The notes below the pieces were generated by a model. That model saw only the letters and a program-made list of their open reading frames with translations, was not told the origin of the DNA and did no database searches. Shown piece after piece: positions 645-16,417 of a stretch of 64,000 nucleotides of DNA (positions are counted from its first letter, which is position 1; the number at the start of each line of letters is the position of its first letter). The translations under genes were made by a program, and so were the position numbers. Where the stretch lies: positions 1-64,000 of IMG/VR virus record IMGVR_UViG_3300027782_000025. One strand, written 5' to 3'.

Positions 645-819
645 GGGAGGGTCTTATAATGGTTGAGTTGTACTTGTGGTGTGGTTTGGTGGCTGTGACT
701 TATGGTGCGGTTGTTACGCTGATTAATTCTAAGCCTTATTAGGCGTTGCGTTTGGAGTGGGTGTTTGTTACAGTTTTTTGTGGTTTTGGTTTTTATTTCT
801 TACACTGGAGGTTTTTATT

Positions 820-1017
820 ATGTGTGATTCATGTTGTCGGGATGTTGAAGCTCGGATTTTGTTTGATGATGAGGGTGTTGTGGCTGGGGTTTTTTGTGAT
901 GATTGCTCGCCGTCGCTTGAGGCGGCTTATGATTTGGAGCTTGCTCCGGTGATGGTTTCTGGGCGTGGGCGGATCTCGAAACGGGCTGCTGCTCGGAAGA
1001 GGGATCGGGCTGCGTAG
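820..1017 (+). CDS. Small Cys-containing protein with basic tail
   Basis: SD GGAGG, ATG 820; CxxC twice. Confidence 0.7.
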   Translation: MCDSCCRDVEARILFDDEGVVAGVFCDDCSPSLEAAYDLELAPVMVSGRGRISKRAAARKRDRAA

Positions 1018-1112
1018 GGTATCGGTTTCCTGCGAGGAAAGTGGGGTTGCTGGGTGACCCCCCGTTTGTTACAGGCTTTTGGGTTTTAAACACACTTTTT
1101 AGGAGAGACGAA

Positions 1113-1292
1113 ATGATGATGTTTGCAATGTTTGGCGTTTCGGTATTATTGGGCTGTGCTGGCTATGTCGCTGCTATCAATGCAAGCCAGATCGACATAA
1201 GCCTCGCCTTTTTCATCTCCTTCTTGGCCACAGCTGGACAAATCGTGACCGCCTTTATGGCTGGACTCTGCGTGGACCCTCCACGCAACTAG
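1113..1292 (+). CDS. Small membrane protein (2 TM)
   Basis: AGGAGAG SD; two hydrophobic segments. Confidence 0.7.
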   Translation: MMMFAMFGVSVLLGCAGYVAAINASQIDISLAFFISFLATAGQIVTAFMAGLCVDPPRN

Positions 1293-1301
1293 ATTTCAGG
1301 T

Positions 1302-1354
1302 GATCGGTCTCCTGTGTGGGAGAGGGTGAGGAGATTGCTCCGCCCTCTCTTTTT
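1302..1354 (+). terminator. Repeated GATCGGTCTCCTGTGTGGG + hairpin terminator, copy 1
   Basis: Stem GAGAGGG/CCCTCTC, then T tract; homologous to 1879, 3941, 6897. Confidence 0.7.
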
Positions 1355-1424
1355 AATATTGACAAAATCGTTACACTCTGCTACAGGATTTTGGGTTCGA
1401 AACACACTTTTTAGGAGAGTAAGA

Positions 1425-1844
1425 ATGTTGAGCAAAGATTTCATTACAGCTGGTAACGCGATCTTCACCGTCGAAAACAACAAGGGTGAGCACTTCACCT
1501 TCAAGGTCGAAAAGAAGAAGGCGGAGAAGAACTATCCGGACGCTTGGTTCGTCCGAGCCATGGTCGGGACAGATAACACCGAGCACTACGCTTACCTCGG
1601 ACTCCTCGATGCTGAATACGGCAAAGTAAAGATGACCAGAGCTTCGAAATTCACCGAAGACCAAACCCAAACCAAGGTGGTTCGCTGGGCGTTGGACAAA
1701 ATCTGGACGAACGGAAGCCTGCCTGAGGGCTACAAGATCCGCCACAATGGGCACTGCAGCCGTTGCAAGCGGGTCTTGACCAATCCCGAATCTCTCGATA
1801 CCGGAATCGGGCCAGAGTGCGCCAAGATTCTGGCGGGAGAATAA
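1425..1844 (+). CDS. DUF6011-like zinc-finger protein
   Basis: C-terminal CSRCKRVLTNPESLDTGIGPEC matches the remembered CxxCxRxLTxxxSxxxGIGPxC pattern; SD AGGAGAG. Confidence 0.7.
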   Translation: MLSKDFITAGNAIFTVENNKGEHFTFKVEKKKAEKNYPDAWFVRAMVGTDNTEHYAYLGLLDAEYGKVKMTRASKFTEDQTQTKVVRWALDKIWTNGSLPEGYKIRHNGHCSRCKRVLTNPESLDTGIGPECAKILAGE

Positions 1845-1878
1845 AACACGCCCTGAGGGCTTTCCTCAGGGCTTCAAG

Positions 1879-1931
1879 TCGGTCTCCTGTGTGGGAACGG
1901 GCTGGTGGTTAAATCACCGGCCCGTTCTTTT
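1879..1931 (+). terminator. Repeated terminator element, copy 2
   Basis: TCGGTCTCCTGTGTGGG then a different 13-bp stem and T tract. Confidence 0.7.
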
Positions 1932-2048
1932 ATATCCATGGGATTTACAGCGGAGCCCCCGCTTGTTACAGAGAAGAGGCGGGGGGAGGCGGAGGCGACC
2001 AGTGTGGTGGCCGCGCTCCCCCCGCGAGACACACACGGAGAGTTTGCT

Positions 2049-2363
2049 ATGGGTAAGGTAATGAGGTCGGATGTGGTGAAGTTCAAGTCTTGGCTCAGTG
2101 AGCGCGTCGCGTGCCCTGAGGCCTCCGGTCACTTCGAGATCTGGGAATATGAGCCCTTCTGCGAAGTCCGGGACGAGTGGGACGACTTCGGCGAGCGAAA
2201 GCTCGTGTGGCAGATGAAGAGCTCGGACTACCTCTGCGAGGACGAGATCGACCCGAAGGCCAAGGATATCGCGCGTCTCCTGAAGGCCGTCAAAGACGAG
2301 TTCAAGCTGGTGGCGGCGAAGGACGACGAGCACACGTTCTACGCGGCTCGTCTCCCCCGATAA
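2049..2363 (+). CDS. Hypothetical, probable paralog of 5612-6058
   Basis: ACACACACGGAG leader; shares DVxxFKxWL..C and DD...VWQ motifs. Confidence 0.75.
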   Translation: MGKVMRSDVVKFKSWLSERVACPEASGHFEIWEYEPFCEVRDEWDDFGERKLVWQMKSSDYLCEDEIDPKAKDIARLLKAVKDEFKLVAAKDDEHTFYAARLPR

Positions 2364-2464
2364 TCCCTGGGGGTTGCGCCAGGGCTCCGGCTCTGGCGCT
2401 CTTCCCTTTTGTTTGTTACAGTGGTTTGCGGTTTTTTCCTTTTTTTCACACTGGAGGGTTTGCT

Positions 2465-2716
2465 ATGAGGACTTCTGAACTGGTTGACTTGTCTTTTGCT
2501 GAAATGGCTGATAAGCTTGTTGTGAAGTTTGGCCCTGCGCGGCCGAGCGAGAAGCTGATGAAGAAGGCGATCGTCTGGAGCGGGACTCACTTGAACGGTC
2601 TGTTCCTTGCGCACTATCACTTGAACGTGAAGTGCTTTGAGGACTCGGTGATGTGGCGCGAGCTGCTGCTCGAGGAGCTCAGGGCTGCCGCGGACAGGCG
2701 GTACGGGCAGGGATAA
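2465..2716 (+). CDS. Hypothetical early protein
   Basis: SD GGAGG after promoter 2414. Confidence 0.7.
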   Translation: MRTSELVDLSFAEMADKLVVKFGPARPSEKLMKKAIVWSGTHLNGLFLAHYHLNVKCFEDSVMWRELLLEELRAAADRRYGQG

Positions 2717-2823
2717 TACGGTTTCCAGAGAGGAAAACGCGGGGTTGCCGGTGGCGGCCCCGCTTGTTACAGAGAAAAGTGGAAGCCACAGTGGCGACCA
2801 AGAAACACACAAAGGAGAGAAAA

Positions 2824-3258
2824 ATGGCAGAAATGAATCTTGACCTTTTCCGTTTTAACAGCACTGAAGCCAGTTTGTCTTTTAGTTCGTTTCACGAGAA
2901 AAACTGCGAATTCGGTGGTGCAGAGTCTGGTGTAGGTGAGAATCGATGGTCTTATAACATCGAAAAAGACGGTTCGACAAATTACAAAGATGACTTTTTT
3001 GATAATGATCGATGCGGCGGAGGACCAGATGAATATAGTGACTCTTTAAGTGAACCTAGTCCAGTTCCTACAAAAGAAGATGCGATAAAAGAAATAGAGA
3101 GTTTAATCGAAGGCAAAAGAAAGACATTGGCCGATTTGGAAGCCTTCTTAACAGCTTTCCAGACTGCCCCAGGACCTTACACAGACTTGGGTGACTACTG
3201 GAAGTTCGAAGCTAGCGAGGACGAGGACGAGGACGAAGACGAAGACGAAGACGAATAG
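2824..3258 (+). CDS. Very acidic protein with (ED)n tail
   Basis: SD AGGAGAG; GARGAC hexamer repeat encodes EDEDEDEDEDEDE. Confidence 0.75.
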   Translation: MAEMNLDLFRFNSTEASLSFSSFHEKNCEFGGAESGVGENRWSYNIEKDGSTNYKDDFFDNDRCGGGPDEYSDSLSEPSPVPTKEDAIKEIESLIEGKRKTLADLEAFLTAFQTAPGPYTDLGDYWKFEASEDEDEDEDEDEDE

Positions 3259-3363
3259 TCCGGTTTCCAGAGAGGAAAGCGGGGTTGCCGCTGGTGACCC
3301 CGTTTGTTACAGAGAAAAGTGGAAGCCGCTGTGGTGACCACAGAACACACACGGAGAAAAGAA

Positions 3364-3600
3364 ATGTTTACAGCGCGAATCAGCGATGGGAAGACGTCAG
3401 GAAAACTGTTCAGCGGCAAGCAAGCCGTTAACATAATGAAAAAGGCGGCGATCGACGCCAAAAAGGGCAAGGGCGCTTTTCGCTTGGAGCTGAGCGAGAA
3501 CAACAGGCTTTGCGTGGTGGCCTTCGGCAAAACGGCAGTTGAAGCCGCGTCATATGGTGCGGCGATCCACAGAAAGGAAGTCAGGGAGGGCAGGCGCTAG
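3364..3600 (+). CDS. Hypothetical basic early protein
   Basis: Cassette promoter and ACACACGGAG leader. Confidence 0.75.
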   Translation: MFTARISDGKTSGKLFSGKQAVNIMKKAAIDAKKGKGAFRLELSENNRLCVVAFGKTAVEAASYGAAIHRKEVREGRR

Positions 3601-3688
3601 TCGACCGGAAAGGCCGGGGGTTGACAAAACGACCCCCGCTTGTTACAGGGTGATGGGTTCGGAAATCACACTTTCAAGGAGAGACGAA

Positions 3689-3931
3689 ATGACGACAAAA
3701 GAATGCCAGACAGTGAGACGACAAAGGGTCGAGTTCCAAATCGCCTTGGCCGGTAATTGTGACCAATGGGTTCCAGCCTGTGGCGGGACCGAGTTGCCTT
3801 TCCGATCAAGGTCTGGACGATCTTTGCACTACATGTACAACCCCCAGCAAAAACGCCACGCTTACCTTGACACCGCGACGGACGTGATTCTCACTGATCA
3901 AGAGGCGGACGCGTTCATGGAGCGTGTTTAA
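3689..3931 (+). CDS. Hypothetical phage protein (WVPACGGTE motif)
   Basis: SD AAGGAGAG, promoter 3621-3649. Confidence 0.75.
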   Translation: MTTKECQTVRRQRVEFQIALAGNCDQWVPACGGTELPFRSRSGRSLHYMYNPQQKRHAYLDTATDVILTDQEADAFMERV

Positions 3932-3940
3932 TTTTTAGGT

Positions 3941-3992
3941 GATCGGTCTCCTGTGTGGGGGAGGGTGAGGAGTTTGCTCCGCCCTCCCTTTT
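3941..3992 (+). terminator. Repeated terminator element, copy 3
   Basis: Stem GGGAGGG/CCCTCCC, T tract. Confidence 0.7.
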
Positions 3993-4115
3993 AAAAACAA
4001 AAGGCGCCTATTGCGCCGCGGGCCTCTGTCTGCTACAGAGGAGAGGCGGGGGAGACGAGGGCGGCCAGTGTGGCGGCCCCGGCCCCACCCGCAACACACA
4101 CAAAGGAGAGAAGAT

Positions 4116-4394
4116 ATGAGAATTGAAAGCGTGGTGGTCATCATTTGGGACGAAGTTGGAGAAAAGGCTTCGACCTTCCACGAAGCAGCCGACGGGACAG
4201 GGTTAGTCTTAGACCGCGACCTGACAACGGAAGAGCTAAACAATAACATAGAACTGAAGCTGTTCGGAAAAGACATCTCGTCTTGGCGAGCGACAGGGTA
4301 CATGGAGATCAACGACGTGACCATCATCACGTCGAAATCTGACCGCGGGCATCTGAGCACGACTCAGATCGTCTGGCTCGGGGCCGCTGAATAG
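4116..4394 (+). CDS. Hypothetical early protein
   Basis: SD AAGGAGAG. Confidence 0.7.
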   Translation: MRIESVVVIIWDEVGEKASTFHEAADGTGLVLDRDLTTEELNNNIELKLFGKDISSWRATGYMEINDVTIITSKSDRGHLSTTQIVWLGAAE

Positions 4395-4486
4395 TCGGTT
4401 TCCAAGGGAGGAAAGCGGGGTTGCGCAAACGACCCCCTTTTGTTACAAGATTCTGGGTTTGATAATCACACACAAAGGAGAAAGAG

Positions 4487-4720
4487 ATGTTAACACACGA
4501 GCTAGCTAAGCTGCTTCTTGAAGGCCCAGACGTCGAGATATCCGTCATGGCCGCGCCAGGGGTTACGAACTACATCCAAGGAATAACCTCGTTTTTGGCT
4601 GGCTCTTACCCTGCACCGTCTTGGGACGATGACGCAGGATCGATGAGAGATGTGGTTGTCCTGTTGGCTACCAGAGAAACCCTAAACGAAGACGAAGCTC
4701 TCGTCTTTTCAAAGAGCTAG
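4487..4720 (+). CDS. Hypothetical early protein
   Basis: Cassette promoter, SD AAGGAG. Confidence 0.7.
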   Translation: MLTHELAKLLLEGPDVEISVMAAPGVTNYIQGITSFLAGSYPAPSWDDDAGSMRDVVVLLATRETLNEDEALVFSKS

Positions 4721-4791
4721 CCTGATTGACAAACCGGCTCCCGTCTGCTACAATTTATCGGGGTTTCAAACACACTTTTTAGGAGATAGAA

Positions 4792-5022
4792 ATGGCTGTA
4801 AAATTCCCAGAAGTAAGCGTCAAATTAGTAGGAGAAGACGGAAACGCCTTCTCTATCCTCGGAAGGGTCAAAAAAGCTATGCGTCGAGCCAAGATCGAAA
4901 AAGACCAAATCGACGCCTACATGAACGACGCCATGAGCGGCGACTATAACCACCTCCTGCATGTGACTATGGAGACAGTATCCTGCGACACCGATGAAGA
5001 CGAAGAGTACGACGAGGAATAG
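4792..5022 (+). CDS. Conserved-type small phage protein (GxDGNAF...SGDY motif)
   Basis: Near-consensus promoter TTGACA-N17-TACAAT; motif recalled from phage hypotheticals. Confidence 0.75.
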   Translation: MAVKFPEVSVKLVGEDGNAFSILGRVKKAMRRAKIEKDQIDAYMNDAMSGDYNHLLHVTMETVSCDTDEDEEYDEE

Positions 5023-5117
5023 TTAGGTTTCCAACGAGGAAATGGGGTTGCGCAAGCCACCCCAGTTTGTTACAAGATTTTGGGTTTGATAAACACACTT
5101 TTTAAAGGAGCTTCAAA

Positions 5118-5510
5118 ATGGGATTAGACATGTGGGCCTTCGCAGTACCAAAAGACGCGGTAAAAATAGCCGCCACCGACGTCAAATTCGACGACGAGAC
5201 CGAAAAAGCGCAAGAGGAATTAGCCTGCTGGCGCAAACACCATGATCTACATGGATGGATGGAAAAACTCTACAACGAAAAAGGAGGAAAAGCGCTAAGC
5301 TTCAACTGCGTCACCGTCCAGCTCGAAGAAGAAGATCTGAACCGCCTCGAAGAAGACGTAAAAAGCAACCAGCTACCCCAAACCTCAGGGTTCTTCTTCG
5401 GCAACAACCCGCCCAATGACGACACCATCGAAGAAGACCTAGAGTTCGTCGAAAAAGCAAGAGAAGCGATCAAAGAAGGAAAAGTCGTCTACTACAACTC
5501 TTGGTGGTAA
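5118..5510 (+). CDS. Conserved-type phage protein (MGLDM...WRKH...GFFFG)
   Basis: Cassette promoter, SD AAGGAG; function unknown. Confidence 0.8.
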   Translation: MGLDMWAFAVPKDAVKIAATDVKFDDETEKAQEELACWRKHHDLHGWMEKLYNEKGGKALSFNCVTVQLEEEDLNRLEEDVKSNQLPQTSGFFFGNNPPNDDTIEEDLEFVEKAREAIKEGKVVYYNSWW

Positions 5511-5611
5511 CGCGGCCGACAATCTAACCAAAATAACGAACGGGATTGCGAACAGCGACCCCGTTCGTTACAGTATATCGGGATTCAAAACACTTTTCTA
5601 AAGGAAAACCG

Positions 5612-6058
5612 ATGAAAAAAGCACAAGTGACCAAAGCCGACGTCCTCAGATTCAAAGAATGGCTCGAAACCAAAATGACCTGCGAAAGAACCAACGTCGA
5701 CACCCGACACTATCCCGCCTTCCAAGAAATCCTTGAAGAATACGACGACAAGCCACCGGTTTGGCAAATCAAAAAGCCAAAGTCCTACAAATCAGCACAT
5801 AATTACCAAACCGGCGGAACACACGAACTAGGTCAAGGCGAAAGCTACGTCGACATCTGCGGCGAAAAATACATCCAAAACGATAAAGAAAATTTTGATA
5901 GCGACGACCCAAGGCGTAAAAACACCAAGCTGCTGTTCCAAAAGACCGCCAAGCTCACCGACCTCGCCTTCAGCTATTACTACTTGCCGCCTGAGCACAC
6001 CGTCCTAGAGGAATACCCACGCGTCTTCGTTAAGCCTTGGAACCGGAAAGAACGGTAA
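5612..6058 (+). CDS. Hypothetical, probable paralog of 2049-2363
   Basis: SD AAGGA; shared N-terminal motif. Confidence 0.75.
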   Translation: MKKAQVTKADVLRFKEWLETKMTCERTNVDTRHYPAFQEILEEYDDKPPVWQIKKPKSYKSAHNYQTGGTHELGQGESYVDICGEKYIQNDKENFDSDDPRRKNTKLLFQKTAKLTDLAFSYYYLPPEHTVLEEYPRVFVKPWNRKER

Positions 6059-6078
6059 ATAACCAAAAGGAGTAACAA

Positions 6079-6318
6079 ATGGACCCAAAGCTAATCAAAA
6101 CTGCGTTCAAAGCCTTCAAAAAAAGGCTAAAACTAACCCAACTGGTCGAAGATTCAAAGGTCAGCACAAGGCAAATGACCGGGGGAAGCACCAACGACAT
6201 CATCGCCATCCAACCCCCGGTTGACTTCCCCCCAGATGTCTGGAGAGAATTGGTGAAACAGGGGAAGCTAAAACAAGCCGGGGGAGGACTATTAGAATTG
6301 GTCCCCCAGAACCGGTAG
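6079..6318 (+). CDS. Small protein resembling a Planctomycetota-type hypothetical family
   Basis: AFKAFKKRLKLT...IIAIQPP..FPPDVWRELVKQGKL; family recalled from memory, unverified. Confidence 0.65.
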   Translation: MDPKLIKTAFKAFKKRLKLTQLVEDSKVSTRQMTGGSTNDIIAIQPPVDFPPDVWRELVKQGKLKQAGGGLLELVPQNR

Positions 6319-6362
6319 ATAGTATTGTAAGTCTAGTGTTGTTTTAAATCCAGGAGCAGAAA

Positions 6363-6632
6363 ATGCGAATTTATCAGTTAGTAGACGGCGACAAGACCTT
6401 TCACTTCTTCAGGACGAAAGCAGAAGCTAAACAGGCTAAATCCGCTCTCGTCACAATTTACCGGGATTTGGACGCGGAAGAAAAAGCTCAGAAGCTCGAG
6501 ATTCTCAAAGACCAGCCCACTGAAGTAGAAGTACCGACCAACAAGGATAAATTCCTGGTTTGGTTGACTGACTACACCAAAAAGGTCCGCGTTTGTGCTA
6601 CCCCTTGTCAGGCTCAATCGACACTGGGATAA
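6363..6632 (+). CDS. Hypothetical protein
   Basis: SD AGGAG. Confidence 0.7.
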   Translation: MRIYQLVDGDKTFHFFRTKAEAKQAKSALVTIYRDLDAEEKAQKLEILKDQPTEVEVPTNKDKFLVWLTDYTKKVRVCATPCQAQSTLG

Positions 6633-6696
6633 TTGCCAAGGGCTTTCTCCTTGTTACAGGGTTTTGGGTTCGAAACACTAGCCAAGGAGATTTGAA

Positions 6697-6882
6697 ATGT
6701 ACAAGATAATCAGATTCTCAGCGATTGGCATGTCGAAGGTTATCAAGACTGTTGATACTCTTGAGGAGGCTCGGGCACATTGCGAAGACCCTGAGACTAG
6801 CTCTCGGACTTGCACTTCTGACGAGGGTTTGGAACTGACATCGAGTATTGGCTCTTGGTTTGATGGTTACACCGAGTGCTAA
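6697..6882 (+). CDS. Hypothetical early protein
   Basis: Promoter 6633-6660, SD AAGGAG. Confidence 0.7.
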   Translation: MYKIIRFSAIGMSKVIKTVDTLEEARAHCEDPETSSRTCTSDEGLELTSSIGSWFDGYTEC

Positions 6883-10497: not shown

Positions 10498-10527
10498 CTG
10501 TTTTCTCCTTTAAATTTTATTTTTCAT

Positions 10528-10599
10528 TGGGACGGGTGGGGATCGAACCCACTTCCTTAGTGTTATGAGCACTCTGCTCGGCCGTTGAGCTTCCGTCCC
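10528..10599 (-). tRNA. tRNA with CAT anticodon (elongator Met or Ile2), atypical, no encoded CCA
   Basis: Acceptor GGGACGG/CCGTCCC, D stem GCTC/GAGC, anticodon loop CTCATAA, T arm GTGGG-TTCGATC-CCCAC, discriminator A. Confidence 0.85.
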
Positions 10600-10611
10600 T
10601 CTAGCCAATAT

Positions 10612-10836
10612 CTACGCCAAAATCTTTTCAGCACTGATCAGCCTGCTCACTTGGTAGACAAGCTCGTCATCCACCGTACATCCCCTTTCGTAAACATCTA
10701 GGGAATCAGCTAGATCTCTGTCCTTAAACTTCTTTATAGCAAACCAGTGAGCCTCAGGCACGGTTTTGAAAGGTCCATATGTTCTCGGGACCACAGCCTG
10801 GCCCCCACAGCCGAATTCTACTACTATGAACATCAT
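10612..10836 (-). CDS. Hypothetical, paralog of 11602-11793
   Basis: SD AAGGAG; shared RT(Y/F)GPFxT..EAH and LVYQV/PVYQV motifs. Confidence 0.75.
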   Translation of the reverse strand: MMFIVVEFGCGGQAVVPRTYGPFKTVPEAHWFAIKKFKDRDLADSLDVYERGCTVDDELVYQVSRLISAEKILA

Positions 10837-10903
10837 TATCTCCTTGAAAAAGTGTCCGAAACCCCCAAAATACTGTGACAGACCAGAGCCGAAAATGCAA
10901 TGG

Positions 10904-11191
10904 TCATATCCTATAGAAATGGTATGACCAATCGAAACCACGGTCCCACCAGAAACCATGTTCCTTTGCCACTTTGTTCAGCCTATCAACATCCATATCA
11001 TCCTTACCAGCTGGGATATATCCATTTAATAATTCATAAAGCGGCCCCTCACATATCAGTGTAAAGGTTGAACCGTTTCCGACCTTTTCGTTTCGGTCTG
11101 CCCATTCTTCTTTGCTATAGATCTTGGTGTCTTCATATTTCTCGGCAAGACCATTTAAAACTTCGAGCATTTTTCCTTCATCGTAAGGCAT
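10904..11191 (-). CDS. Hypothetical early protein
   Basis: Cassette promoter 11230-11258 on -, SD AAGGAG. Confidence 0.75.
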   Translation of the reverse strand: MPYDEGKMLEVLNGLAEKYEDTKIYSKEEWADRNEKVGNGSTFTLICEGPLYELLNGYIPAGKDDMDVDRLNKVAKEHGFWWDRGFDWSYHFYRI

Positions 11192-11269
11192 TAGTTCTTC
11201 TCCTTGAAAAAGTGTTAAATCTCCGAGACCCTGTAACAAAATGGGGTTGCTGCGTCAACCCCTTAGGAA

Positions 11270-11440
11270 TTAGATCTCAGTGTACGCGACACTGGCCTTC
11301 TTTCCAAACATCGCCTGAGCCGTTTTCTCGGCTTGGTTTTGGCCGGTAGACCGAATGTAAAAATTCGCGACTTCAACACCTTTTTCGTCATAAACGATAA
11401 AAACTTTGGTGCCTTTACCGACGAACTTGATTTCACTCAT
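11270..11440 (-). CDS. Small hypothetical protein (56 aa, not in ORF track)
   Basis: MSEIKFVGKGTKVFIVYDEKG...AYTEI; CACACTTTTAGGAGA leader and promoter 11481-11509. Confidence 0.75.
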   Translation of the reverse strand: MSEIKFVGKGTKVFIVYDEKGVEVANFYIRSTGQNQAEKTAQAMFGKKASVAYTEI

Positions 11441-11480
11441 TTTTTCTTCTCCTAAAAGTGTGATTTTCTAACCCCAAAAC

Positions 11481-11551
11481 CCTGTAGCAAGCCGAGAAGC
11501 CTTTGTAAACAGTGTTTGAGGGTTTACAGGCGGGCGCCGGCTTGTTACAGG
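11481..11551. promoter_or_regulatory. Divergent promoter pair
   Basis: TTTACA-N17-TACAGG on both strands, -35 boxes 13 bp apart. Confidence 0.75.
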
Positions 11552-11601
11552 GAGAGGAGCGGGGACCGCAGTGGTGACCGCGAAACACACGGAGTAGAAA
11601 A

Positions 11602-11793
11602 ATGTTTACAGTTGTGCAGTTTGAGTGCGGCGAGACGGTTGTGGCGACCAGGACCTTTGGCCCCTTCGGGACCACTATTGAGGCCCACGTTTACGCACAG
11701 AACGTGTTCCCCGGCCTGAGCGTCGACGAGTACGGCAGAGGCGTGACTGAGGACGGAGACCCCGTCTACCAAGTGACACCACTGTCCAAGTAG
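11602..11793 (+). CDS. Hypothetical, paralog of 10612-10836
   Basis: ACACACGGAG leader. Confidence 0.75.
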   Translation: MFTVVQFECGETVVATRTFGPFGTTIEAHVYAQNVFPGLSVDEYGRGVTEDGDPVYQVTPLSK

Positions 11794-11871
11794 TTCCTAG
11801 GGGTTGCGTGAGCGACCCCCGTCTGTTACAAGGTTTTGGGTTCGAAACACACTTTCTTAAGGAGAGAAAAG

Positions 11872-12297
11872 ATGAGCTATGAATCGATGAGTGAAGCGGA
11901 GAAGTTAAAAATCTGGATCGCTGGCGTGAATGGAGAGAATAAGATGACCATCAGTGATTTTGACTATGAGCCGGGCGGGAAGTGGGACTGCGGGCATTTG
12001 AATTTCACTGCCACTACGCCTTTTGGCGACTTAGAATGGGAGGAAGTTATCCCAGGGCCACGCCATAGCGGCGACTCAGCGTCAGTTACAGTCACGTTGG
12101 ACGGGGATGACGTATCAGATTTATTCTGTGACCTAGACTTTGAAGCGCCACGCGAGGAAGGGCGCTGGGCAGACGAATTTAGAGAGGACGACGGGGTTTT
12201 GGATCAGCTCTTTGTCTACCTTGAGGCCATCAAAGATCAGCTGGTGGCGTTTAAAAAGGAGAAAAACGAGAGTCCTAGCGACGATAGAGACGAGTAA
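11872..12297 (+). CDS. Acidic hypothetical protein
   Basis: SD AAGGAGAG. Confidence 0.75.
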   Translation: MSYESMSEAEKLKIWIAGVNGENKMTISDFDYEPGGKWDCGHLNFTATTPFGDLEWEEVIPGPRHSGDSASVTVTLDGDDVSDLFCDLDFEAPREEGRWADEFREDDGVLDQLFVYLEAIKDQLVAFKKEKNESPSDDRDE

Positions 12298-12390
12298 TCG
12301 GTTTCCAAGGAGGAAAGCTGGGGGTTGCCCCAGCAGCCCCGTCTGTTACAAAGTATTGGGTTCGGAAATCACACTTTTAGGAGAAGAAAA

Positions 12391-12666
12391 ATGACAACTG
12401 AAGAATCGATCTACGTGGACATTATCGAAGACAAAGTCCCACCGACCAGCGTTCTTGTTACGAATGCCCCGATTGAAGCCAATATTAAGGAGCACAAAGA
12501 AATCGGCTCCCTTTGCCCCTACCAACGCGACACCTTGCGTTTTGTCAGCATCCTCAACGTCCATGACCGGATAGCTCAAGCTAAAGCGTGGAGGGAAGCG
12601 AATTACACCGTTCAAGGGCTGGTTCCGAACCTCCTTGAAACCGCCCGGAATTACGCCAAGAGCTAA
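12391..12666 (+). CDS. Hypothetical early protein
   Basis: Cassette promoter, SD AGGAG. Confidence 0.7.
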   Translation: MTTEESIYVDIIEDKVPPTSVLVTNAPIEANIKEHKEIGSLCPYQRDTLRFVSILNVHDRIAQAKAWREANYTVQGLVPNLLETARNYAKS

Positions 12667-12710
12667 CTTCCCTAGGGGTTTCGTAAACACACTTTTAAAG
12701 GAGAATCGAA

Positions 12711-13085
12711 ATGATAATTAAAAAGCTGATCTTCAGTAAATCGCAAACGTCTATCTTAAACGCATGGAGCCGTCAGCTCCAAGCATTATTCAGTGTCTCG
12801 CATGAAGGTGAAGAAGGCTATTTCCTCTACGAGGCGACATTTTACCGACAGTTTCCGACAAAAGATTCATCAATATTCGCTGACGATGACGACGATGTCG
12901 AGTACTTTTGCGACATCAAAAGTATTCTCACGGAAGACGACCTCATGTATGATGAGGACGAAATCTTTAGCGTCTTAAACGACTTTAATTATGGCGGCGC
13001 GTTCCATATGGAGCCAGAGCACAAAGAAATTACGCCATCAATCAAAGAGATAATCGAGGGTCTGTACAAGAAACCAATAATATAA
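12711..13085 (+). CDS. Hypothetical, paralog of 7332-7658
   Basis: SD AAGGAG; shared motifs. Confidence 0.75.
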   Translation: MIIKKLIFSKSQTSILNAWSRQLQALFSVSHEGEEGYFLYEATFYRQFPTKDSSIFADDDDDVEYFCDIKSILTEDDLMYDEDEIFSVLNDFNYGGAFHMEPEHKEITPSIKEIIEGLYKKPII

Positions 13086-13179
13086 TCCGGTTTCCAACGA
13101 GGAAAGCGGGTGGGGTTTACTCCTCCACTCGCCTTTGTTACAGGGTTTTGGGGTTTTAGCATTTTTTCAAGGAGAAAAA

Positions 13180-13860
13180 ATGGAAAATAGCTTCTTTGGT
13201 GACAAAAGAGTCCTTTTAAAATTTGATAAAAGAGACCAAGAATTCGAGAAATGGTTACTGAATTGTGAAGATCAAGCAAATACCATAGCATATATTAATG
13301 GGGTAATCGATGGAAGATGGCCAGAAGCAGAGCCGATCTTAATGAAAACAGAATACGCCGTAGGATATGCAGATAAATTCATTAAAGGAAGATGGCTTGA
13401 AGCCGAGCCATATATAATGAAAAACCCAATATTGGCCTATTGTTACGCTGAAGAAGTTATAAAAGGAAGATGGCTAGAAGCCGAACAAACCATAATGACA
13501 GATCCAGAATGCACCATCGCCTATGCTTTAGAAATCATCAAAGGAAGATGGATAGAAGCAGAACCTTTTATAAAGACTTCCCCAGCATGTGCCGCGGCGT
13601 ACGCTATCGGTATCACCAAGATGAGATGGGAAGACACACAGCTTGAATTGCGTATACTTGAATGTACGACAGAGTTAAACTACATCAGAAATCCTTCATC
13701 TGACTATTGGCAACATTCATGGGGAACCGGTGTTACTAAATACGTTTATGCCAGAATGGTTGCTAAAACATCTTGGAAAAAGCTGTATGCCGAAGTTAAA
13801 GCCACGCATGCCGAGATCACATGTTACGATAACATTAATCTCGTCGGTGTCGAAGAGTAG
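13180..13860 (+). CDS. 26-aa repeat (GRWxEAEPxI) solenoid protein
   Basis: Repeats with 78-bp period; ends DNINLVGVEE like the modules of 39607-44634. Confidence 0.85.
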   Translation: MENSFFGDKRVLLKFDKRDQEFEKWLLNCEDQANTIAYINGVIDGRWPEAEPILMKTEYAVGYADKFIKGRWLEAEPYIMKNPILAYCYAEEVIKGRWLEAEQTIMTDPECTIAYALEIIKGRWIEAEPFIKTSPACAAAYAIGITKMRWEDTQLELRILECTTELNYIRNPSSDYWQHSWGTGVTKYVYARMVAKTSWKKLYAEVKATHAEITCYDNINLVGVEE

Positions 13861-13925
13861 CTATTTCCACTCGGTTTCCATTTGTTACAGGGTTTTGGGT
13901 TTTAACACTTTTTTCAAGGAGAAAA

Positions 13926-15053
13926 ATGATGAATACTGTAGTAATGCAATCGGCCAGCCTCTACTTCAAAGACAATGTAAGTGACAAAGTCTACAACGTC
14001 ACCCTCGAAGAAGCAGATGGTGGATACATCGTCAACTGCTCATGGGGTAGACGAGGCGGAGCCTTACAAAGTGCCACGCAAACCAAATCCCCAGTATCCA
14101 TCGACAAAGCCATCGCCATCTACCATAAAAAACTATCCGAAAAAACCTCTAAAGGATACATGCCCACCTCCGACACCGGCAGAACACTCGGCAACTCCAT
14201 AACCGTGCCCGACACCGATAAACCATTCGAACCAATCTGTAACCTACTAAACCCTATAAACGAATACCAACTCAAACAACTGCTAATAGACGACTCTTGG
14301 ATCATGCAAGAAAAAATGGACGGCGTGCGCATGATCCTCACGCGCAAAGGCGACAGCATCACCGCAGTCAGCCGAACAGGACGCGAAGCCACAATCCCCC
14401 AAGAAGTACACGACACCCTCATCAAGACCTCAGTCCAGAACTACATCATCGACGGAGAACTAGTCGGCGACGTCTACCACGTATTCGACCTCCTAAGACT
14501 CCAAGCAATGGACTTCGCGGCCAAGAATACCTTCGAAGAAAGATATGAAGCACTCGTCGAACTACTCAACGGCATCGACGACACCAACGTCAAAGTCGTG
14601 AAGACCCACTCAGGCTACGACAAAACCCAGGCCTTCGAAGACCTTAAATCCGCCGAAGGCGTGGTGTTCAAGCACAAAAACGCGTTCTATAAGGCTGGTA
14701 GACCATCAAGCGGTGGCGGATACTTGAAATACAAGTTCTACAAAAGCTGCAGCGCTCTGGTCACCGGGATAAATGACAAAAGGTCTATAGCCCTGAGTTT
14801 AATCGAAGACATGCCAGAGCACGGTAGCGAATATGTCGTCGGTAGAAGGCTCATATCAGTAGGGAACTGCACCATCCCCGTGAATTATGACTTCCCACAA
14901 AATGGTGACATCGTTGAGATTAAATACCTCTATGCTCGGAAGCCTAGCAACGCGCTCTACCAGCCGAGCTACCTTGGTAAAAGGACGGACATCCAGCTTA
15001 AGGATGTCCTATTGTCGCAGCTCATCTATAAGGTGGGTGAGGAAGAGGAATAG
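13926..15053 (+). CDS. WGR domain + ATP-dependent DNA ligase
   Basis: SDKVY...WGRRG...K..EK..KGY (WGR); QEKMDGVR (KxDG), DGEL, FDLL, EGVVFK motifs; C-terminal OB fold. Confidence 0.85.
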   Translation: MMNTVVMQSASLYFKDNVSDKVYNVTLEEADGGYIVNCSWGRRGGALQSATQTKSPVSIDKAIAIYHKKLSEKTSKGYMPTSDTGRTLGNSITVPDTDKPFEPICNLLNPINEYQLKQLLIDDSWIMQEKMDGVRMILTRKGDSITAVSRTGREATIPQEVHDTLIKTSVQNYIIDGELVGDVYHVFDLLRLQAMDFAAKNTFEERYEALVELLNGIDDTNVKVVKTHSGYDKTQAFEDLKSAEGVVFKHKNAFYKAGRPSSGGGYLKYKFYKSCSALVTGINDKRSIALSLIEDMPEHGSEYVVGRRLISVGNCTIPVNYDFPQNGDIVEIKYLYARKPSNALYQPSYLGKRTDIQLKDVLLSQLIYKVGEEEE

Positions 15054-15154
15054 TACCATTTCCAACGAGGAAAGCATGGGGTGGGGGGATTTACTCTTCC
15101 GCCCCTTTTTGCTACAACGTATTGGGTTAATAACACTTTTCAAGGAGAAAAACG

Positions 15155-15367
15155 ATGAGATTCAATGTAACAGCCGAAAATGCCGAACGCCTAAGGCCAG
15201 ACGAAGTAAAAGCAATACTCGAGAACCTAATCGAAACCGCCTGCACTCATTTCGAAGACGTGCTAGACTCAGACTCGGACCACGACCCCGAGTGGAAAGA
15301 ATACGCTCGGAACTCCCTCGACATAAAATTCACAATCGAAATCGCCCAGAATCAAGGAGAAATATAA
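15155..15367 (+). CDS. Hypothetical early protein
   Basis: Cassette promoter, SD AAGGAG. Confidence 0.7.
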   Translation: MRFNVTAENAERLRPDEVKAILENLIETACTHFEDVLDSDSDHDPEWKEYARNSLDIKFTIEIAQNQGEI

Positions 15368-15570
15368 TGAAATACAAAATCCTAATCGACGACAACGTAA
15401 CCGACCTAATGGAAAAAGTCAACACCCACCTCGAAGACAAATGGGAAATAATAGGCTCCCACACTGTGGCCATCCGCAAAACACAAAACCGATACTCAGG
15501 CGAACGACTTATGGACTGCTATAGCCAGCTAGAATATACGCAAACAGTCATCAAACATATTGACGATTGA
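15367..15570 (+). CDS. Hypothetical (possibly DUF1737-like)
   Basis: TAATG coupling; YKIL...LxxxVNxxLxxxWxxxG pattern. Confidence 0.55.
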   Translation: MKYKILIDDNVTDLMEKVNTHLEDKWEIIGSHTVAIRKTQNRYSGERLMDCYSQLEYTQTVIKHIDD

Positions 15571-15632
15571 CAAAGCCCATTAAACCTGCTACAATAAAAC
15601 CAGATTTCACCATTTAACCAAGGAGCATAAGC

Positions 15633-15911
15633 ATGAAAAAGAAAACCGAAAAGAAACCAGAAGTAATGATCGTCTGGGCCTCAACCAAAGAACACCTTGA
15701 CAAAGGAGAAATCCACGTCCTCGACTCCTACGTCGGCCCCCGAAAATACCTAAAAGACGAACTCGATCCCAGACTAACCATGGGAAGCGACCAAAAACTC
15801 CCATTCGCCCAAACGTGGCAAGAAGCCGTTTTCTTCATGGGTGAAAACCTAGGCAAACCAGTACAACTCCTCACCTCCGTTGGCAAACGCGTCGGCCTCC
15901 TCGAAGACTAA
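15633..15911 (+). CDS. Hypothetical protein
   Basis: Promoter TTGACA-N17-TACAAT, SD AAGGAG. Confidence 0.7.
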   Translation: MKKKTEKKPEVMIVWASTKEHLDKGEIHVLDSYVGPRKYLKDELDPRLTMGSDQKLPFAQTWQEAVFFMGENLGKPVQLLTSVGKRVGLLED

Positions 15912-15920
15912 GGAAAAAAC

Positions 15921-16337
15921 ATGGACCCACTAAGAACCTGTACATGCTGCGATAAAGAGCTACCCCCGGCCTCCTTCCCAAGAGAAGTCGGGGACTGCGA
16001 AGAATGCTGCGCCAAACGCTTCCTAATAGATATGTTCGAAAGCCCAAAAAGCGAACAACACTTCTGGAAATTCCGCGCGTGGAGCACAACAGCCTACGAC
16101 ACCAAAAGCCTACTCGAAGAAGAATCCGAATACTTCCACATAGAAGTCATGCAAAAAAATCTCCGCATCACCCTAGGCATCAAGAAAAAGACTAATTCAG
16201 AAGACGAATATCTAATCTGGGTAGGTGACAAACAATTATTAGTAAAAGCCACCCCTATGACCCCCGAGACAATCGAACTCGGTGAAGACAGTGGCAAAGT
16301 AATAAGTATCCACGAAGCAAAAGACCGATTAGAATAA
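15921..16337 (+). CDS. Hypothetical with N-terminal Cys finger
   Basis: CTCC...CEEC; SD AAGGA. Confidence 0.7.
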   Translation: MDPLRTCTCCDKELPPASFPREVGDCEECCAKRFLIDMFESPKSEQHFWKFRAWSTTAYDTKSLLEEESEYFHIEVMQKNLRITLGIKKKTNSEDEYLIWVGDKQLLVKATPMTPETIELGEDSGKVISIHEAKDRLE

Positions 16338-16417
16338 TTCACATCCATAGAATTTACACCTTGACCATTACCTGCTACAAAGTATTGGGTTTTTAACACT
16401 TGTTCAAGGAAACTAAG

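What the first reader, a model, noticed from the sequence alone, without database searches (positions are those of the whole stretch)
746..16379. Array of single-gene cassettes bounded by a fused terminator/promoter module
Seen: about 33 promoter copies in the first 16.4 kb, about 10 more up to 32.3 kb, and only two seen beyond (49837, 51661). In many copies the -35 sits inside a GC inverted repeat, e.g. GGGGTTGACAAAACGACCCC (3617-3636), followed by G(T/C)TTGTTACA. The same bases could form a terminator-like hairpin with a U-rich tail for the upstream gene and the -35/extended -10 for the next. Stems covary between copies (TTG..CGA, TTG..CAG, TTG..TGG). Established: T4-type phages carry promoter-early-stem-loop (PeSL) cassettes that shuffle small genes. 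Inference: a distinct shuffling and co-regulation system. TGT-T-ACA is also a palindrome that one repressor could bind on every -10.
Basis: partly seen in the sequence, partly recalled or inferred. Interest (0 to 1): 0.75.

Follow-up and report, generated by a model that had tools for sequence, protein, structure and literature searches.

The report
PeSL-type promoter–terminator cassette array
The first 32 kb of this uncultured giant freshwater T4-related phage is a run of about 45 small genes, each with the same combined terminator/promoter module, and relatives show these genes are swapped at the modules; this design is already known from T4-type phages as "PeSL" cassettes.

Summary
The 17-nt-spacer form alone gives 31 matches against 0.65 expected by chance.

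The module runs from stop codon to start codon. It holds a small hairpin, a GC hairpin that often contains the -35, a short U-rich tail that carries the extended -10 (TGYTACA), and one of two conserved 5'UTR types ending in a Shine-Dalgarno.

The -35 hairpin tolerates U-A/U-G swaps and is more stable on the sense strand in 103 of 109 cases. That points to an RNA structure such as a terminator, not a DNA operator.

The contig is a 275-kb lake-metagenome phage with a T4-type capsid and portal. About 30 related metagenome contigs share blocks at 80-97% identity but differ in cassette content and order. Of 45 breakpoint clusters, 38 lie within 15 nt of an intergenic module (p about 1e-14).

This is a PeSL-type array (Arbiol 2010; Comeau 2014) in a deep-branching T4-like megaphage, not a distinct system. 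Strict two-sided covariation is weak, and the palindrome/repressor idea is not supported. Promoter and terminator activity remain untested.

The parts
160..32305 (.). The whole hyperplastic early-gene array: about 75 mostly small ORFs (median 89-133 aa) and 43 promoter modules. Its GC3 is 53-57% against 34% in the rest of the contig.
163..189 (-). Promoter copy (17-nt spacer) at the left edge of the array, pointing left towards larger genes that are seen only in relative G001.
248..274 (-). Promoter copy, back-to-back with 278-304. The two -35 boxes lie in the palindrome CTGCAAT-T-ATTGCAG.
278..304 (+). First rightward promoter copy, followed by a 90-nt structured 5'UTR (class B).
746..772 (+). 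Promoter copy, 17-nt spacer.
1047..1073 (+). Promoter copy with the -35 in a GC hairpin and the hp1 hairpin upstream.
1318..1356 (+). Type II terminator: a 10-14 bp GC-rich stem followed by T5, placed just before the -35 TTGACA of the next promoter. Repeated at 3957-3994 and 6913-6950.
1359..1385 (+). Promoter copy (TTGACA-17-TGCTACA) after a type II terminator.
1944..1970 (+). Promoter copy, followed by a class B 5'UTR hairpin (1971-2048, -39 kcal/mol).
2370..2420 (+). Variant module: a terminator-like hairpin (2376-2399), a T-rich tail and TGTTACA, but no -35 at the right spacing.
2745..2771 (+). Promoter copy, fused hairpin (-22.8 kcal/mol), hp1 upstream. This is the left repeat flanking cassette 2824-3258.
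2824..3258 (+). Example cassette (144-aa acidic ORF). It is absent from G001/L046 and L060, and from contigs of runs X6 and X10. The deletion junction lies inside the roughly 105-bp module repeat.
3264..3278 (+). hp1: TTTCC-AGAGA-GGAAA, beginning a few nt after the stop codon (TAG at 3256-3258).
3277..3305 (+). hp2: a 13-bp stem (AAAGCGGGGTTGCC / GGTGACCCCGTTT) that holds the -35. The whole segment folds at -22.5 kcal/mol.
3285..3311 (+). Promoter copy: -35 TTGCCG (3285-3290), TG (3305-3306), -10 TACAGA (3308-3313).
3621..3647 (+). Promoter copy.
4011..4037 (+). Promoter copy after a type II terminator (3957-3994), followed by a class B 5'UTR.
4421..4447 (+). Promoter copy, fused hairpin, hp1.
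4726..4752 (+). Promoter copy TTGACA-17-TGCTACAAT. It also scores 11 of 12 in the generic sigma-70 scan.
5048..5074 (+). Promoter copy, hairpin with one mismatch, hp1.
5546..5572 (+). Variant promoter (CG in place of the extended -10 TG) in a GC hairpin.
6633..6658 (+). Promoter copy, 16-nt spacer.
6958..6983 (+). Promoter copy, 16-nt spacer, after a type II terminator (6913-6950).
7250..7276 (+). Promoter copy, fused hairpin, class B 5'UTR.
7685..7711 (+). Promoter copy, fused hairpin, hp1.
9084..9109 (+). Variant promoter (-35 TTACGC) lying inside the 3' end of the upstream ORF.
9747..9773 (+). Promoter copy, fused 9-bp hairpin (9742-9763) followed by GTTTGTT.
10874..10900 (-). Variant promoter (TGTCACA).
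11232..11258 (-). Promoter copy, fused hairpin, in the inverted block.
11483..11509 (-). Promoter copy, back-to-back with 11523-11549.
11523..11549 (+). Promoter copy, class B 5'UTR.
11804..11830 (+). Promoter copy, fused hairpin.
12325..12350 (+). Promoter copy, 16-nt spacer, GC hairpin, hp1.
13116..13142 (+). Promoter copy (TTTACT) with the -35 in the loop of a different GC stem (13106-13132), hp1.
13864..13889 (+). Promoter copy, 16-nt spacer, upstream of the ligase-like gene.
15090..15116 (+). Promoter copy (TTTACT) with the -35 in the loop of an 11-bp GC stem (15078-15105) followed by T5.
15567..15593 (+). Promoter copy TTGACA-17-TGCTACAAT, no hairpin.
16353..16379 (+). Promoter copy that leads the three-gene unit ending in the sigma-factor gene.
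19166..19192 (-). Promoter copy.
20302..20328 (+). Variant promoter (GGTTACA) before the DksA/TraR-like and CsrA-like genes.
24328..24353 (-). Promoter copy, 16-nt spacer.
24791..24816 (-). Promoter copy, 16-nt spacer, with the -35 in the loop of an 8-bp stem.
25249..25274 (-). Promoter copy, 16-nt spacer, back-to-back with 25326-25352.
25326..25352 (+). Promoter copy before the helicase-like gene.
26614..26639 (+). Promoter copy, 16-nt spacer.
27928..27954 (+). Promoter copy.
30379..30404 (-). Promoter copy, 16-nt spacer.
32279..32305 (-). Last promoter copy of the array. GC content drops right after it.
49837..49863 (-). Isolated promoter copy outside the array.
51661..51687 (-). Isolated promoter copy before the radical-SAM gene.
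1074..1112 (+). Example of a class A 5'UTR: GGCTTTTGGGTTTTAAACACAC-TTTTT-AGGAGAG, 39 nt from TACA to ATG.
17497..18153 (+). Phage-encoded two-domain sigma-70-family factor, with no module of its own. It is expressed from the array and is relevant to one rival explanation.

Best explanation
Window 160-32,305 is the hyperplastic early region of an uncultured freshwater megaphage with a T4-type capsid (contig 275 kb, estimated 70% complete). It is built from PeSL-type regulatory cassettes.

The module. Each small gene is preceded by a module of about 100-130 bp that starts at the upstream stop codon. It contains hp1 (TTTCC-ANNGA-GGAAA) and then hp2. In the commonest form hp2 reads (AAAGC)GGGG-TTGC-loop-GCRRCCCC(GTTT), so the -35 TTGC forms part of the 5' arm. 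A short U-rich tail follows. It also supplies the extended -10 (TG at -15/-14, then TACARR). After that comes one of two conserved 5'UTR types ending in ACACAC, an AGGAGA Shine-Dalgarno and the ATG. A second module type uses a separate canonical terminator (long GC stem plus T4-6) just before a TTGACA -35.

Inferred mechanism. Early in infection the host's primary-sigma RNA polymerase fires all of these promoters. Each transcript ends at the hairpin(s) after its stop codon, which insulates each gene. The same roughly 30 bp act as terminator RNA for the upstream gene and as promoter DNA for the next one.

Shown by comparison. The modules are near-identical direct repeats, so homologous recombination between them, within a genome or between co-infecting relatives, deletes, inserts, replaces and reorders cassettes without disturbing neighbouring genes.
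For: Motif enrichment and position. There are 31 matches against 0.65 expected. All but two lie in the first 32.3 kb, 36-52 nt (class A and short class B UTRs) upstream of a Shine-Dalgarno-led ATG.

Promoter geometry. The -35 is TTG(C/A), the spacer is 17 nt (16 in 9 copies), and TG sits exactly at the extended -10 position.

RNA-level hairpin. In 92 of 181 unique copies from the window and its relatives the -35 TTG is paired in a hairpin of -10 kcal/mol or better. Opposite the two T's only A or G occurs (1 unpaired cell each in the 56 four-nt-loop copies), and 94% of cells are paired against 42-58% when partners are slid. The sense strand is more stable than the antisense in 103 of 109 cases (means -17.9 and -13.0 kcal/mol; shuffles -9.4; p 3.5e-18). 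G-U pairs work only in RNA of that strand. Loops are often GNRA or UUCG tetraloops.

Terminator-like sites. There are 42 against 20 expected in 1-17 kb, including the fused ones at 1043, 4417, 9742, 11262(-), 13106 and 15078. Type II stems are followed by U4-6.

Shuffling. G001 matches window 1-5517 at 92-95% identity but has 3 cassette indels. One junction lies inside the roughly 105-bp repeat that flanks cassette 2824-3258. Contigs of three DNA runs from other studies show the same or similar junctions: 2748/2776 to 3298, 3311/3314 to 3639/3641, and 3283 to 4433. About 30 metagenome loci show blocks in different order separated by unrelated cassettes. Of 45 breakpoint clusters, 38 lie within 15 nt of an intergenic module against a null of 29% (p 1.4e-14), and two more lie at gene junctions. 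The junction 12680 to 13856-13881 recurs in contigs from four metagenomes. The 68 protein clusters led by a promoter include 35 found only in relatives, and 68 of 227 such ORFs have no match anywhere in the contig.

Lineage and content. Gp23 scores 262 bits and Portal_T4 216 bits. Of 55 small array proteins, 52 have no Pfam family, and no integrase or endonuclease was found.

The published PeSL definition matches.
Against: There is no direct evidence of transcription starts or ends. The only RNA run is held as contigs that break at the repeats, and one of them (2219-2839) crosses two modules. That means either read-through or DNA in the library.

The -10 is TACARR, and T at -7 occurs in only 5 of 30 seed copies. 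Only 2 copies pass a generic sigma-70 scan. The host is unknown.

The U-tract after the fused hairpin is short and interrupted (GTTTGTT, or GTCTGTT in many relatives). In the best fold part of it pairs with the upstream A-tract, so termination may be partial.

Two-sided covariation is almost absent.

The relatives are short-read metagenome assemblies, and repeats of about 100 bp can cause chimeric joins.
Confidence: 0.72

Rival explanations
1. The repeated promoter is read by the phage's own sigma factor (window 17497-18153), not by the host primary sigma. The array would then be a middle-class or self-amplifying regulon.
For: The array encodes a sigma-70-family protein with a clear region 4 (41 bits, above the 24.1 cut-off) and a weak region 2. 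Region 4 reads a -35. The -10 is non-canonical, with no T at -7.
Against: The sigma gene itself lies behind a copy of the same promoter (16353-16379), so it could not start its own expression. The protein matches the two-domain sigma70-ECF superfamily model over its whole length and shows no region 3. From established knowledge, the extended -10 TG is read by region 3.0, which such sigmas lack. The -35 TTGACA/TTGCNN with a 17-nt spacer is the primary-sigma layout.
Confidence: 0.1
2. The hairpins are not efficient terminators. They would be 3'-end stabilisers, processing sites or attenuators within longer read-through early transcripts, with the promoters adding to the flux.
For: The U-tract is short and interrupted. 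An RNA-library contig runs across two modules (2219-2839). hp1 has no U-tail. Arbiol et al. themselves write 'terminator/attenuator'.
Against: Type II stems have textbook terminator form, with 10-14 bp GC-rich stems plus U4-6. The fused stems reach -20 kcal/mol and have A-tract/U-tract flanks. The RNA contig may be DNA carry-over, and depth is only 2-7.
Confidence: 0.2
3. The cassettes move by site-specific recombination at the hairpins, as integron cassettes do at attC, rather than by general homologous recombination.
For: The cassettes are single ORFs bounded by conserved imperfect inverted repeats. The PeSL authors also speculated that GGGG...CCCC might be a protein target.
Against: No integrase, recombinase or homing endonuclease was found among 65 array proteins scanned. 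Every cassette carries its own promoter. Homology between the two sides of a junction spans the whole module of about 105 bp. Homology ends fall at varying places: the stop codon, the -10, the 5'UTR and the ATG. The wobble pairs argue for an RNA structure rather than a DNA one.
Confidence: 0.05
4. TGT-T-ACA is the operator of one repressor that shuts off all the early promoters.
For: The heptamer is nearly invariant and overlaps the -10. A common shut-off of early genes is biologically plausible.
Against: In 11 of the 30 seed copies the motif reads TGCTACA, which breaks the dyad. The half-sites are only 3 bp long. Every conserved base is accounted for by the extended -10 positions TG-n-TA. No flanking dyad is conserved.
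Confidence: 0.04
5. The apparent shuffling is an artefact: short-read assemblers joined different strains, or different arrays, at the 100-bp repeats.
For: All relatives are metagenome contigs. Contigs of the read sets break at the modules. Identity varies between neighbouring blocks, from 82% to 97%.
Against: The same junctions recur in contigs from different samples and studies. Junction 2826 to 3261 appears in G001/L046 and L060, and runs X6 and X10 show near-equivalent junctions. Junction 12680 to 13856-13881 appears in four metagenomes. The window's own order is reproduced at 100% identity over 14.6 kb by a contig with a different record prefix, apparently a separate assembly (L066). Also, 68 cassette ORFs do not exist anywhere in the 275-kb contig.
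Confidence: 0.08

Closest known systems
PeSL (promoter-early stem-loop) cassettes of T4-type phages RB49/phi1, T4/PST and KVP40/nt-1 (Arbiol et al. 2010, PMC2839356; Comeau et al. 2014, PMC4122927)
   Same: [quoted passage not shown] Both have a sigma-70-like -35 and -10 with a 17-nt spacer, and a stem-loop, often GGGG...CCCC, that may overlap the -35. Both include a Shine-Dalgarno at the 3' end and cluster in hyperplastic regions of small ORFans. In both, indels and replacements between close relatives are bounded by the modules. The phage here also has a T4-type capsid and portal.
   Different: The array here is much denser and longer: 43 modules in 32 kb. The module is longer and more uniform, with an extra hairpin (hp1) right after the stop codon and two conserved 5'UTR types. 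For type I modules the region upstream of the -35 is G-rich rather than AT-rich. The -10 is TACARR with an invariant TG and no T at -7. The array has GC3 about 20 points above the core genome. The phage is only about 30% identical in capsid protein to cultured T4-likes. Promoter, terminator and mini-circle activity, which were shown for RB49, are untested here.
Rho-independent (intrinsic) terminators, including those with A-tract/U-tract flanks
   Same: Both have a GC-rich stem of 7-14 bp with a short loop (often GNRA or UUCG) followed by U-rich sequence. Here an A-tract lies upstream (GGAAAGC) and can pair with the U-tract.
   Different: In the fused type the U-tract is only GUUUGUU or GUCUGUU, and it doubles as the promoter spacer and extended -10. 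Efficiency is unknown.
Integron gene cassettes with attC sites
   Same: Both are arrays of single small ORFs separated by conserved hairpin-forming repeats, with cassette content that varies between relatives.
   Different: Here every cassette has its own promoter and no integrase was found. The repeats are long direct repeats with homology across the junction, and the hairpin behaves as an RNA structure (G-U tolerant, strand-specific).
Caulobacter sigma-73 housekeeping promoter consensus TTGaCg / GCtANAWC (cited in PMC13004042)
   Same: Both have a -35 of TTGaC/TTGCNN and a longer -10 of the form G-C-T-A-N-A-W with no requirement for T at the last position. The TGCTACAA copies match 7 of 8 positions.
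   Different: This is a resemblance only. The host is unknown and the phage core is 38-40% GC, unlike Caulobacter. It is a lead for finding the host, not a result.

Membership tests
PeSL regulatory cassettes (Arbiol 2010; Comeau 2014) | Intergenic sigma-70-like early promoter (-35, about 17 nt, -10) repeated many times | tested here: met
   31 copies with a 17-nt spacer against 0.65 expected, plus 9 with a 16-nt spacer. The -35 is TTG(C/A). The -10 is TACARR with the extended TG. This is at sequence level only, and the -10 departs from TATAAT.
PeSL regulatory cassettes (Arbiol 2010; Comeau 2014) | Stable stem-loop (often polyG...polyC) next to or overlapping the promoter boxes | tested here: met
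   In 92 of 181 unique copies the -35 is paired in a hairpin of -10 kcal/mol or better. Folds reach -20 to -22 kcal/mol. The paper lists overlap with the -35 as one of five subclasses.
PeSL regulatory cassettes (Arbiol 2010; Comeau 2014) | [quoted passage not shown] | tested here: not met
   Type I modules have the G-rich hp1/hp2 sequence upstream of the -35. Only type II modules have a short AT-rich spacer such as TTTTTAATA.
PeSL regulatory cassettes (Arbiol 2010; Comeau 2014) | Shine-Dalgarno and start codon of the downstream gene at the module's 3' end | tested here: met
   AGGAG/GGAG lies 5-9 nt before the ATG, and the ATG lies 36-52 nt (class A and short class B UTRs) after TACA.
PeSL regulatory cassettes (Arbiol 2010; Comeau 2014) | Concentrated in hyperplastic regions of small, mostly unknown genes in a T4-type genome | tested here: met
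   43 of 45 window copies lie in 160-32,305. Of 55 small proteins, 52 have no Pfam family. Gp23 and Portal_T4 score above their cut-offs, though the capsid is only about 30% identical to cultured T4-likes.
PeSL regulatory cassettes (Arbiol 2010; Comeau 2014) | Insertions, deletions and replacements between close relatives are bounded by the modules | tested here: met
   Of 45 breakpoint clusters, 38 lie at modules (p 1.4e-14), and one junction lies inside the 105-bp repeat.
PeSL regulatory cassettes (Arbiol 2010; Comeau 2014) | Promoter and terminator activity shown in vivo | not testable with these tools
   The only RNA run is held as contigs that end at the repeats, and no starts or ends were reported.
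PeSL regulatory cassettes (Arbiol 2010; Comeau 2014) | Excised cassette mini-circles | not tested
   The 'goes back' joints are explained by an insertion between duplicated modules (record 5 of X10), not by circles. Raw reads were not available.
Intrinsic terminator | GC-rich stem-loop directly followed by a U-tract, on the strand of the upstream gene | tested here: inconclusive
   There are 42 terminator-like sites against 20 expected. Type II sites are canonical. The fused type has only 4-5 U in 8 nt. The strand asymmetry fits an RNA role.
Integron | Tyrosine-recombinase integrase next to an array of promoterless cassettes | tested here: not met
   No integrase family was found in 65 array proteins, and the cassettes carry promoters. 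The rest of the contig and the missing 30% of the genome were not scanned.

The most novel reading that the evidence does not exclude
The array may be more than a passive PeSL region. It could be a compositionally separate (GC3 55% against 34%), population-wide library of early genes shared among freshwater megaphages. Its modules would carry dedicated RNA signals: hp1 with an ANNGA loop, the class B 5' hairpin with a CNGTGG loop, and the ACACAC box. Regulators encoded in the same array (the CsrA-like protein, the DksA/TraR-like protein and the two-domain sigma) would read these signals. High recombination at the modules would drive the GC rise.
Probability: 0.12. Interest if true: 0.65.

Novelty: new member of a known kind. 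Interest (0 to 1): 0.4.

Why it matters
PeSL cassettes have so far been described only in cultured T4-like phages of enterobacteria, Vibrio and a few others. This case shows the same design, in an unusually dense and uniform form, in a deep-branching uncultured lake megaphage. Public metagenomes also give population-level evidence that the modules are the points of gene exchange: at least 68 cassette families were sampled, and half of them are absent from this genome. That supports the view that promoter-terminator linkers are a general way for large phages to keep an exchangeable set of insulated early genes. It also gives a ready marker, the module itself, for harvesting such accessory genes from metagenomes. 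It does not reveal a new mechanism.

Tried and rejected
1. Megablast of the array and of 40-60 kb against 50,697 phage records found nothing beyond two chance 33-39 bp hits.

2. PHROG and Pfam scans of ten large ORFs from 37-64 kb gave almost nothing.

3. A phiKZ-type multisubunit RNA polymerase was looked for and not found; PF00562 has no match.

4. Rfam found only the tRNA-Met in 1-34 kb, and nothing at the left edge in G001.

5. Reading transcript ends from the metatranscriptome failed. The run is kept as contigs, whose ends sit at repeated 31-mers, and no start or end pile-ups were reported.

6. The promoter motif was sought in the nearest public record by capsid similarity (LR756511.1, 595 kb). 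It has 7 matches against 8 for the reversed control, so the motif is absent there.

7. L004/G002, hit once by the hairpin pattern, has no promoter copies and no similarity, so it is a chance match.

8. G001's 29.5 kb to the left of the window start has no nucleotide match in the contig. The window therefore starts at an assembly break, not a genome end.

9. Strict covariation of the -35 hairpin is not supported.

10. The operator, integron and phage-sigma readings were considered and ranked low; see the rival explanations.

11. A relaxed one-mismatch promoter scan printed nothing, probably because of a fault in my script. The variants were therefore taken from the by-eye listing.

Full report
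WHAT THE WINDOW IS. The window is the first 64 kb of a single 274,625-bp virus contig. The record is classed as linear, and CheckV puts completeness at 70%. Public runs that hold it are lake and freshwater metagenomes. It has no close relative among 50,697 deposited phage genomes. It does encode a T4-type major capsid protein (PF07068, 262 bits) and a T4-type portal (PF07230, 216 bits) further along the contig. The capsid is about 30% identical to cultured T4-like phages and 39% identical to an uncultured 595-kb phage. This is therefore a deep-branching T4-related megaphage. No phiKZ-type RNA polymerase beta subunit was found.

THE OBSERVATION. TTK-N17-TGYTACA occurs 31 times against 0.65 expected, and TTGTTACA occurs 22 times against 2.1. 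Nine further copies have a 16-nt spacer. Five one-base variants sit at the same place upstream of genes. Together these give 33 copies in 1-16,400, 10 in 16,400-32,305 and 2 beyond (49837-, 51661-). The remaining 210 kb of the contig holds only two more convincing copies. The copies lie upstream of Shine-Dalgarno-led start codons at a nearly fixed distance: 36-43 nt for one 5'UTR type and 50-90 nt for the other. About three quarters of the roughly 40 genes in the first 16.4 kb have a copy of their own.

ANATOMY OF THE MODULE. The commonest form (type I) begins at the upstream stop codon.
- hp1 (TTTCC-ANNGA-GGAAA) lies 4-5 nt after the stop, in 50 of 181 unique copies from the window and its relatives.
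- hp2 follows. Its 5' arm is GGGG plus the -35 TTGC(C), and its 3' arm is GCRR/GGYGR plus CCCC. It often extends through AAAGC...GTTT to 13 bp and -20 to -22 kcal/mol.
- The tail GTTTGT or GTCTGT comes next and ends in the extended -10: TG at -15/-14, then TACARR.
- A 5'UTR follows. Class A is RRNTTTTGGGTTYGAAACACAC-TTTTT-AGGAGA. Class B is a GC-rich 5' hairpin with a CNGTGG loop, then ACACAC-GGAGA.

Type II modules (1293-1385, 3931-4037, 6880-6983) have instead a canonical terminator: a long GC-rich stem followed by U4-6, an AT-rich spacer and a TTGACA or TTGCNN -35. Two copies (13116 and 15090) keep a hairpin around the -35 with a quite different stem sequence, TTTACT in the loop. That argues the position of the hairpin is selected, not just copied.

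IS THE HAIRPIN AN RNA OR A DNA FEATURE? In 56 unique copies with a 4-nt loop, 94% of cells pair, against 42-58% when partners are slid. The variation is almost all one-sided. The 5' arm is frozen as the -35, and the base opposite each T is A or G in roughly equal shares. That is still informative, because U-G pairs exist only in RNA of the sense strand. In line with this, the sense strand folds better than the antisense in 103 of 109 hairpin copies (means -17.9 and -13.0 kcal/mol; shuffles -9.4; p 3.5e-18). The loops are often GNRA or UUCG. This favours a role in the upstream gene's transcript, as a terminator or 3' stabiliser, over a DNA operator or cruciform. Generic scanning finds 42 terminator-like sites against 20 expected in 1-17 kb, including six of the fused ones. 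The U-tract of the fused type is short, so efficiency is open.

WHICH POLYMERASE? The layout (-35 TTGACA/TTGCNN, 17 nt, TG-n-TA) is that of a primary sigma factor. The -10 lacks T at -7 in 25 of 30 seed copies, so only two copies pass a generic E. coli-type scan. The longer form TG(C/T)TACA(A/G) recalls the Caulobacter sigma-73 consensus GCtANAWC (PMC13004042). I treat this only as a lead to the host. The array encodes a sigma-70-family protein (17497-18153). Its region 4 scores 41 bits, and it matches the two-domain sigma70-ECF superfamily model over its whole length. That gene sits behind a copy of the same promoter. A two-domain sigma also lacks the region that reads the extended -10 TG (established knowledge). 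I therefore rank the host primary sigma first.

SHUFFLING. Searching public contigs for the hp1-hp2 pattern brought in G001, a 35.6-kb viral contig, and 64 metagenome loci, about 30 of which are true relatives.
- G001 matches window 1-5517 at 92-95% identity but lacks cassette 2824-3258. It has two extra cassettes at 3641-3696 and one at 4090-4123.
- For the first event, the single G001 module has the left flank of the window's left module and the right flank of the window's right module, with the join inside the shared repeat of about 105 bp.
- Contigs of three DNA runs from other studies show joints 2748/2776 to 3298, 3311/3314 to 3639/3641, and 3283 to 4433.
- Longer relatives (L027, L049, L054, L035, L039, L057, L032, L069) share blocks at 80-97% identity, separated by unrelated cassettes and placed in different order. 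In L054 the block 3279-3587 sits between 12261 and 12289. In L057 block 1023-1418 lies about 470 nt of unmatched sequence before block 12289-12680.
- Of 45 clusters of homology ends, 38 lie within 15 nt of an intergenic module where 29% is expected (p 1.4e-14), and two of the exceptions are gene-gene junctions.
- The same junctions recur in contigs from different samples. The window's own order is reproduced at 100% identity over 14.6 kb by a contig with a different record prefix, apparently a separate assembly (L066).
- Promoter-led ORFs from all loci form 68 clusters, 35 of them absent from the window. Of 227 such ORFs, 68 have no match anywhere in the contig.
- Within the window five paralogous pairs show that duplication also occurs.
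- No integrase or endonuclease was found among 65 array proteins.

COMPARISON WITH WHAT IS KNOWN. Arbiol et al. 2010 (PMC2839356) and Comeau et al. 2014 (PMC4122927) describe PeSLs in T4-type phages. These are intergenic composites of a sigma-70-like promoter and a stem-loop that terminates transcription. The stem-loop generally involves GGGG...CCCC. Five subclasses are defined by where the stem-loop sits, including overlap with the -35. PeSLs cluster in hyperplastic regions of ORFans and mediate indels by recombination, with crossovers mapped between the -10 and the ATG. The present array meets every sequence-level criterion except the AT-rich stretch upstream of the -35. Activity and mini-circles could not be tested. 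It differs in degree: 43 modules in 32 kb, a longer and more uniform module with hp1 and two UTR types, a non-canonical -10, and a strong GC island. The nearest public record by capsid similarity does not carry the motif, so the module sequence is specific to this lineage.

VERDICT. The terminator/promoter fusion and the shuffling hold up as far as sequence can show. The system is not distinct from PeSLs, strict covariation is weak, and the palindrome-repressor idea has no support (11 of the 30 seed copies are not palindromic). Novelty: a new member of a known kind. The main open points are direct transcript mapping, the identity of the host and its sigma preference, and the cause of the GC3 jump.

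Noticed in passing
window 300-32,300 compared with the rest of the contig; also G001 (L013) across the same boundary: There is a sharp compositional island. GC3 of array genes is 53-57% against 34% elsewhere, and overall GC is 46-53% against 37-40%. The switch falls at the last module (about 32.3 kb) and, in G001, at the first one. The cause is unknown. Candidates are a foreign gene pool, GC-biased repair in a recombination hot region, or host-like codon use for early genes.
   Followed up: partly
window 17497-18153 (+): A phage-encoded two-domain sigma-70-family factor of 218 aa (Sigma70_r4 41 bits; TIGR02937 39.4 bits, just under its cut-off). It is the last gene of a three-gene unit behind promoter 16353-16379. 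It probably drives a later promoter class that I did not look for.
   Followed up: partly
window 20371-20544 (+) and 20555-20749 (+): A DksA/TraR-type C4 zinc-finger protein (57 aa) and a CsrA-like RNA-binding protein (64 aa) lie side by side in the array. They are candidate host-takeover regulators of RNA polymerase and of translation. CsrA binds GGA motifs, and hp1 loops (AAGGA) and the conserved Shine-Dalgarno contain GGA.
   Followed up: partly
window 10528-10599 (-): A tRNA-Met (CAT), the only tRNA on the 275-kb contig, sits inside the inverted block of the array.
   Followed up: yes
window 13926-15053 (+), 25387-26571 (+), 26688-27851 (+): The larger array genes have recognisable functions: a WGR domain plus ATP-dependent DNA/RNA ligase, an SF2 (ResIII/Helicase_C) helicase, and a DUF932 protein. 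One of the 55 small proteins matches a DNA methyltransferase PHROG; I did not determine which.
   Followed up: partly
window 1971-2048, 4038-4115, 305-394, 7277-7331, 11550-11601: Class B 5'UTRs carry a strong GC-rich hairpin (up to -39 kcal/mol) that would start close to the predicted transcript 5' end. The loop is conserved (CNGTGG) and ACACAC follows before the Shine-Dalgarno. This may be an mRNA-stabilising or regulator-binding element. It has no Rfam match.
   Followed up: partly
window 13180-13860, 16418-17173, 39607-44634 (-), 45579-46901 (-), 52320-53390 (-): Two array proteins share a domain of about 110-200 aa (27-44% identity) with each other and with three large proteins outside the array, including the 1675-aa ORF. 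The domain has no family match.
   Followed up: no
window 1-160; G001 (L013) 6795-11212: The window starts at an assembly break, not a genome end. In relative G001 the sequence continues leftward into a run of minus-strand genes (299, 220, 183, 357 and 377 aa) that the leftward promoters at 163 and 248 would drive. That 29.5 kb has no nucleotide match anywhere in the 275-kb contig.
   Followed up: partly
window 3214-3256: The acidic tail of cassette 2824-3258 (GAC/GAA repeats) attracts thousands of unrelated contigs in read mapping, with depth up to 83,898. This is a low-complexity artefact to mask in any future mapping.
   Followed up: yes
window 50655-51614 (-): A radical-SAM protein (PF04055, 60 bits) outside the array has its own copy of the array promoter (51661-51687).
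   Followed up: no
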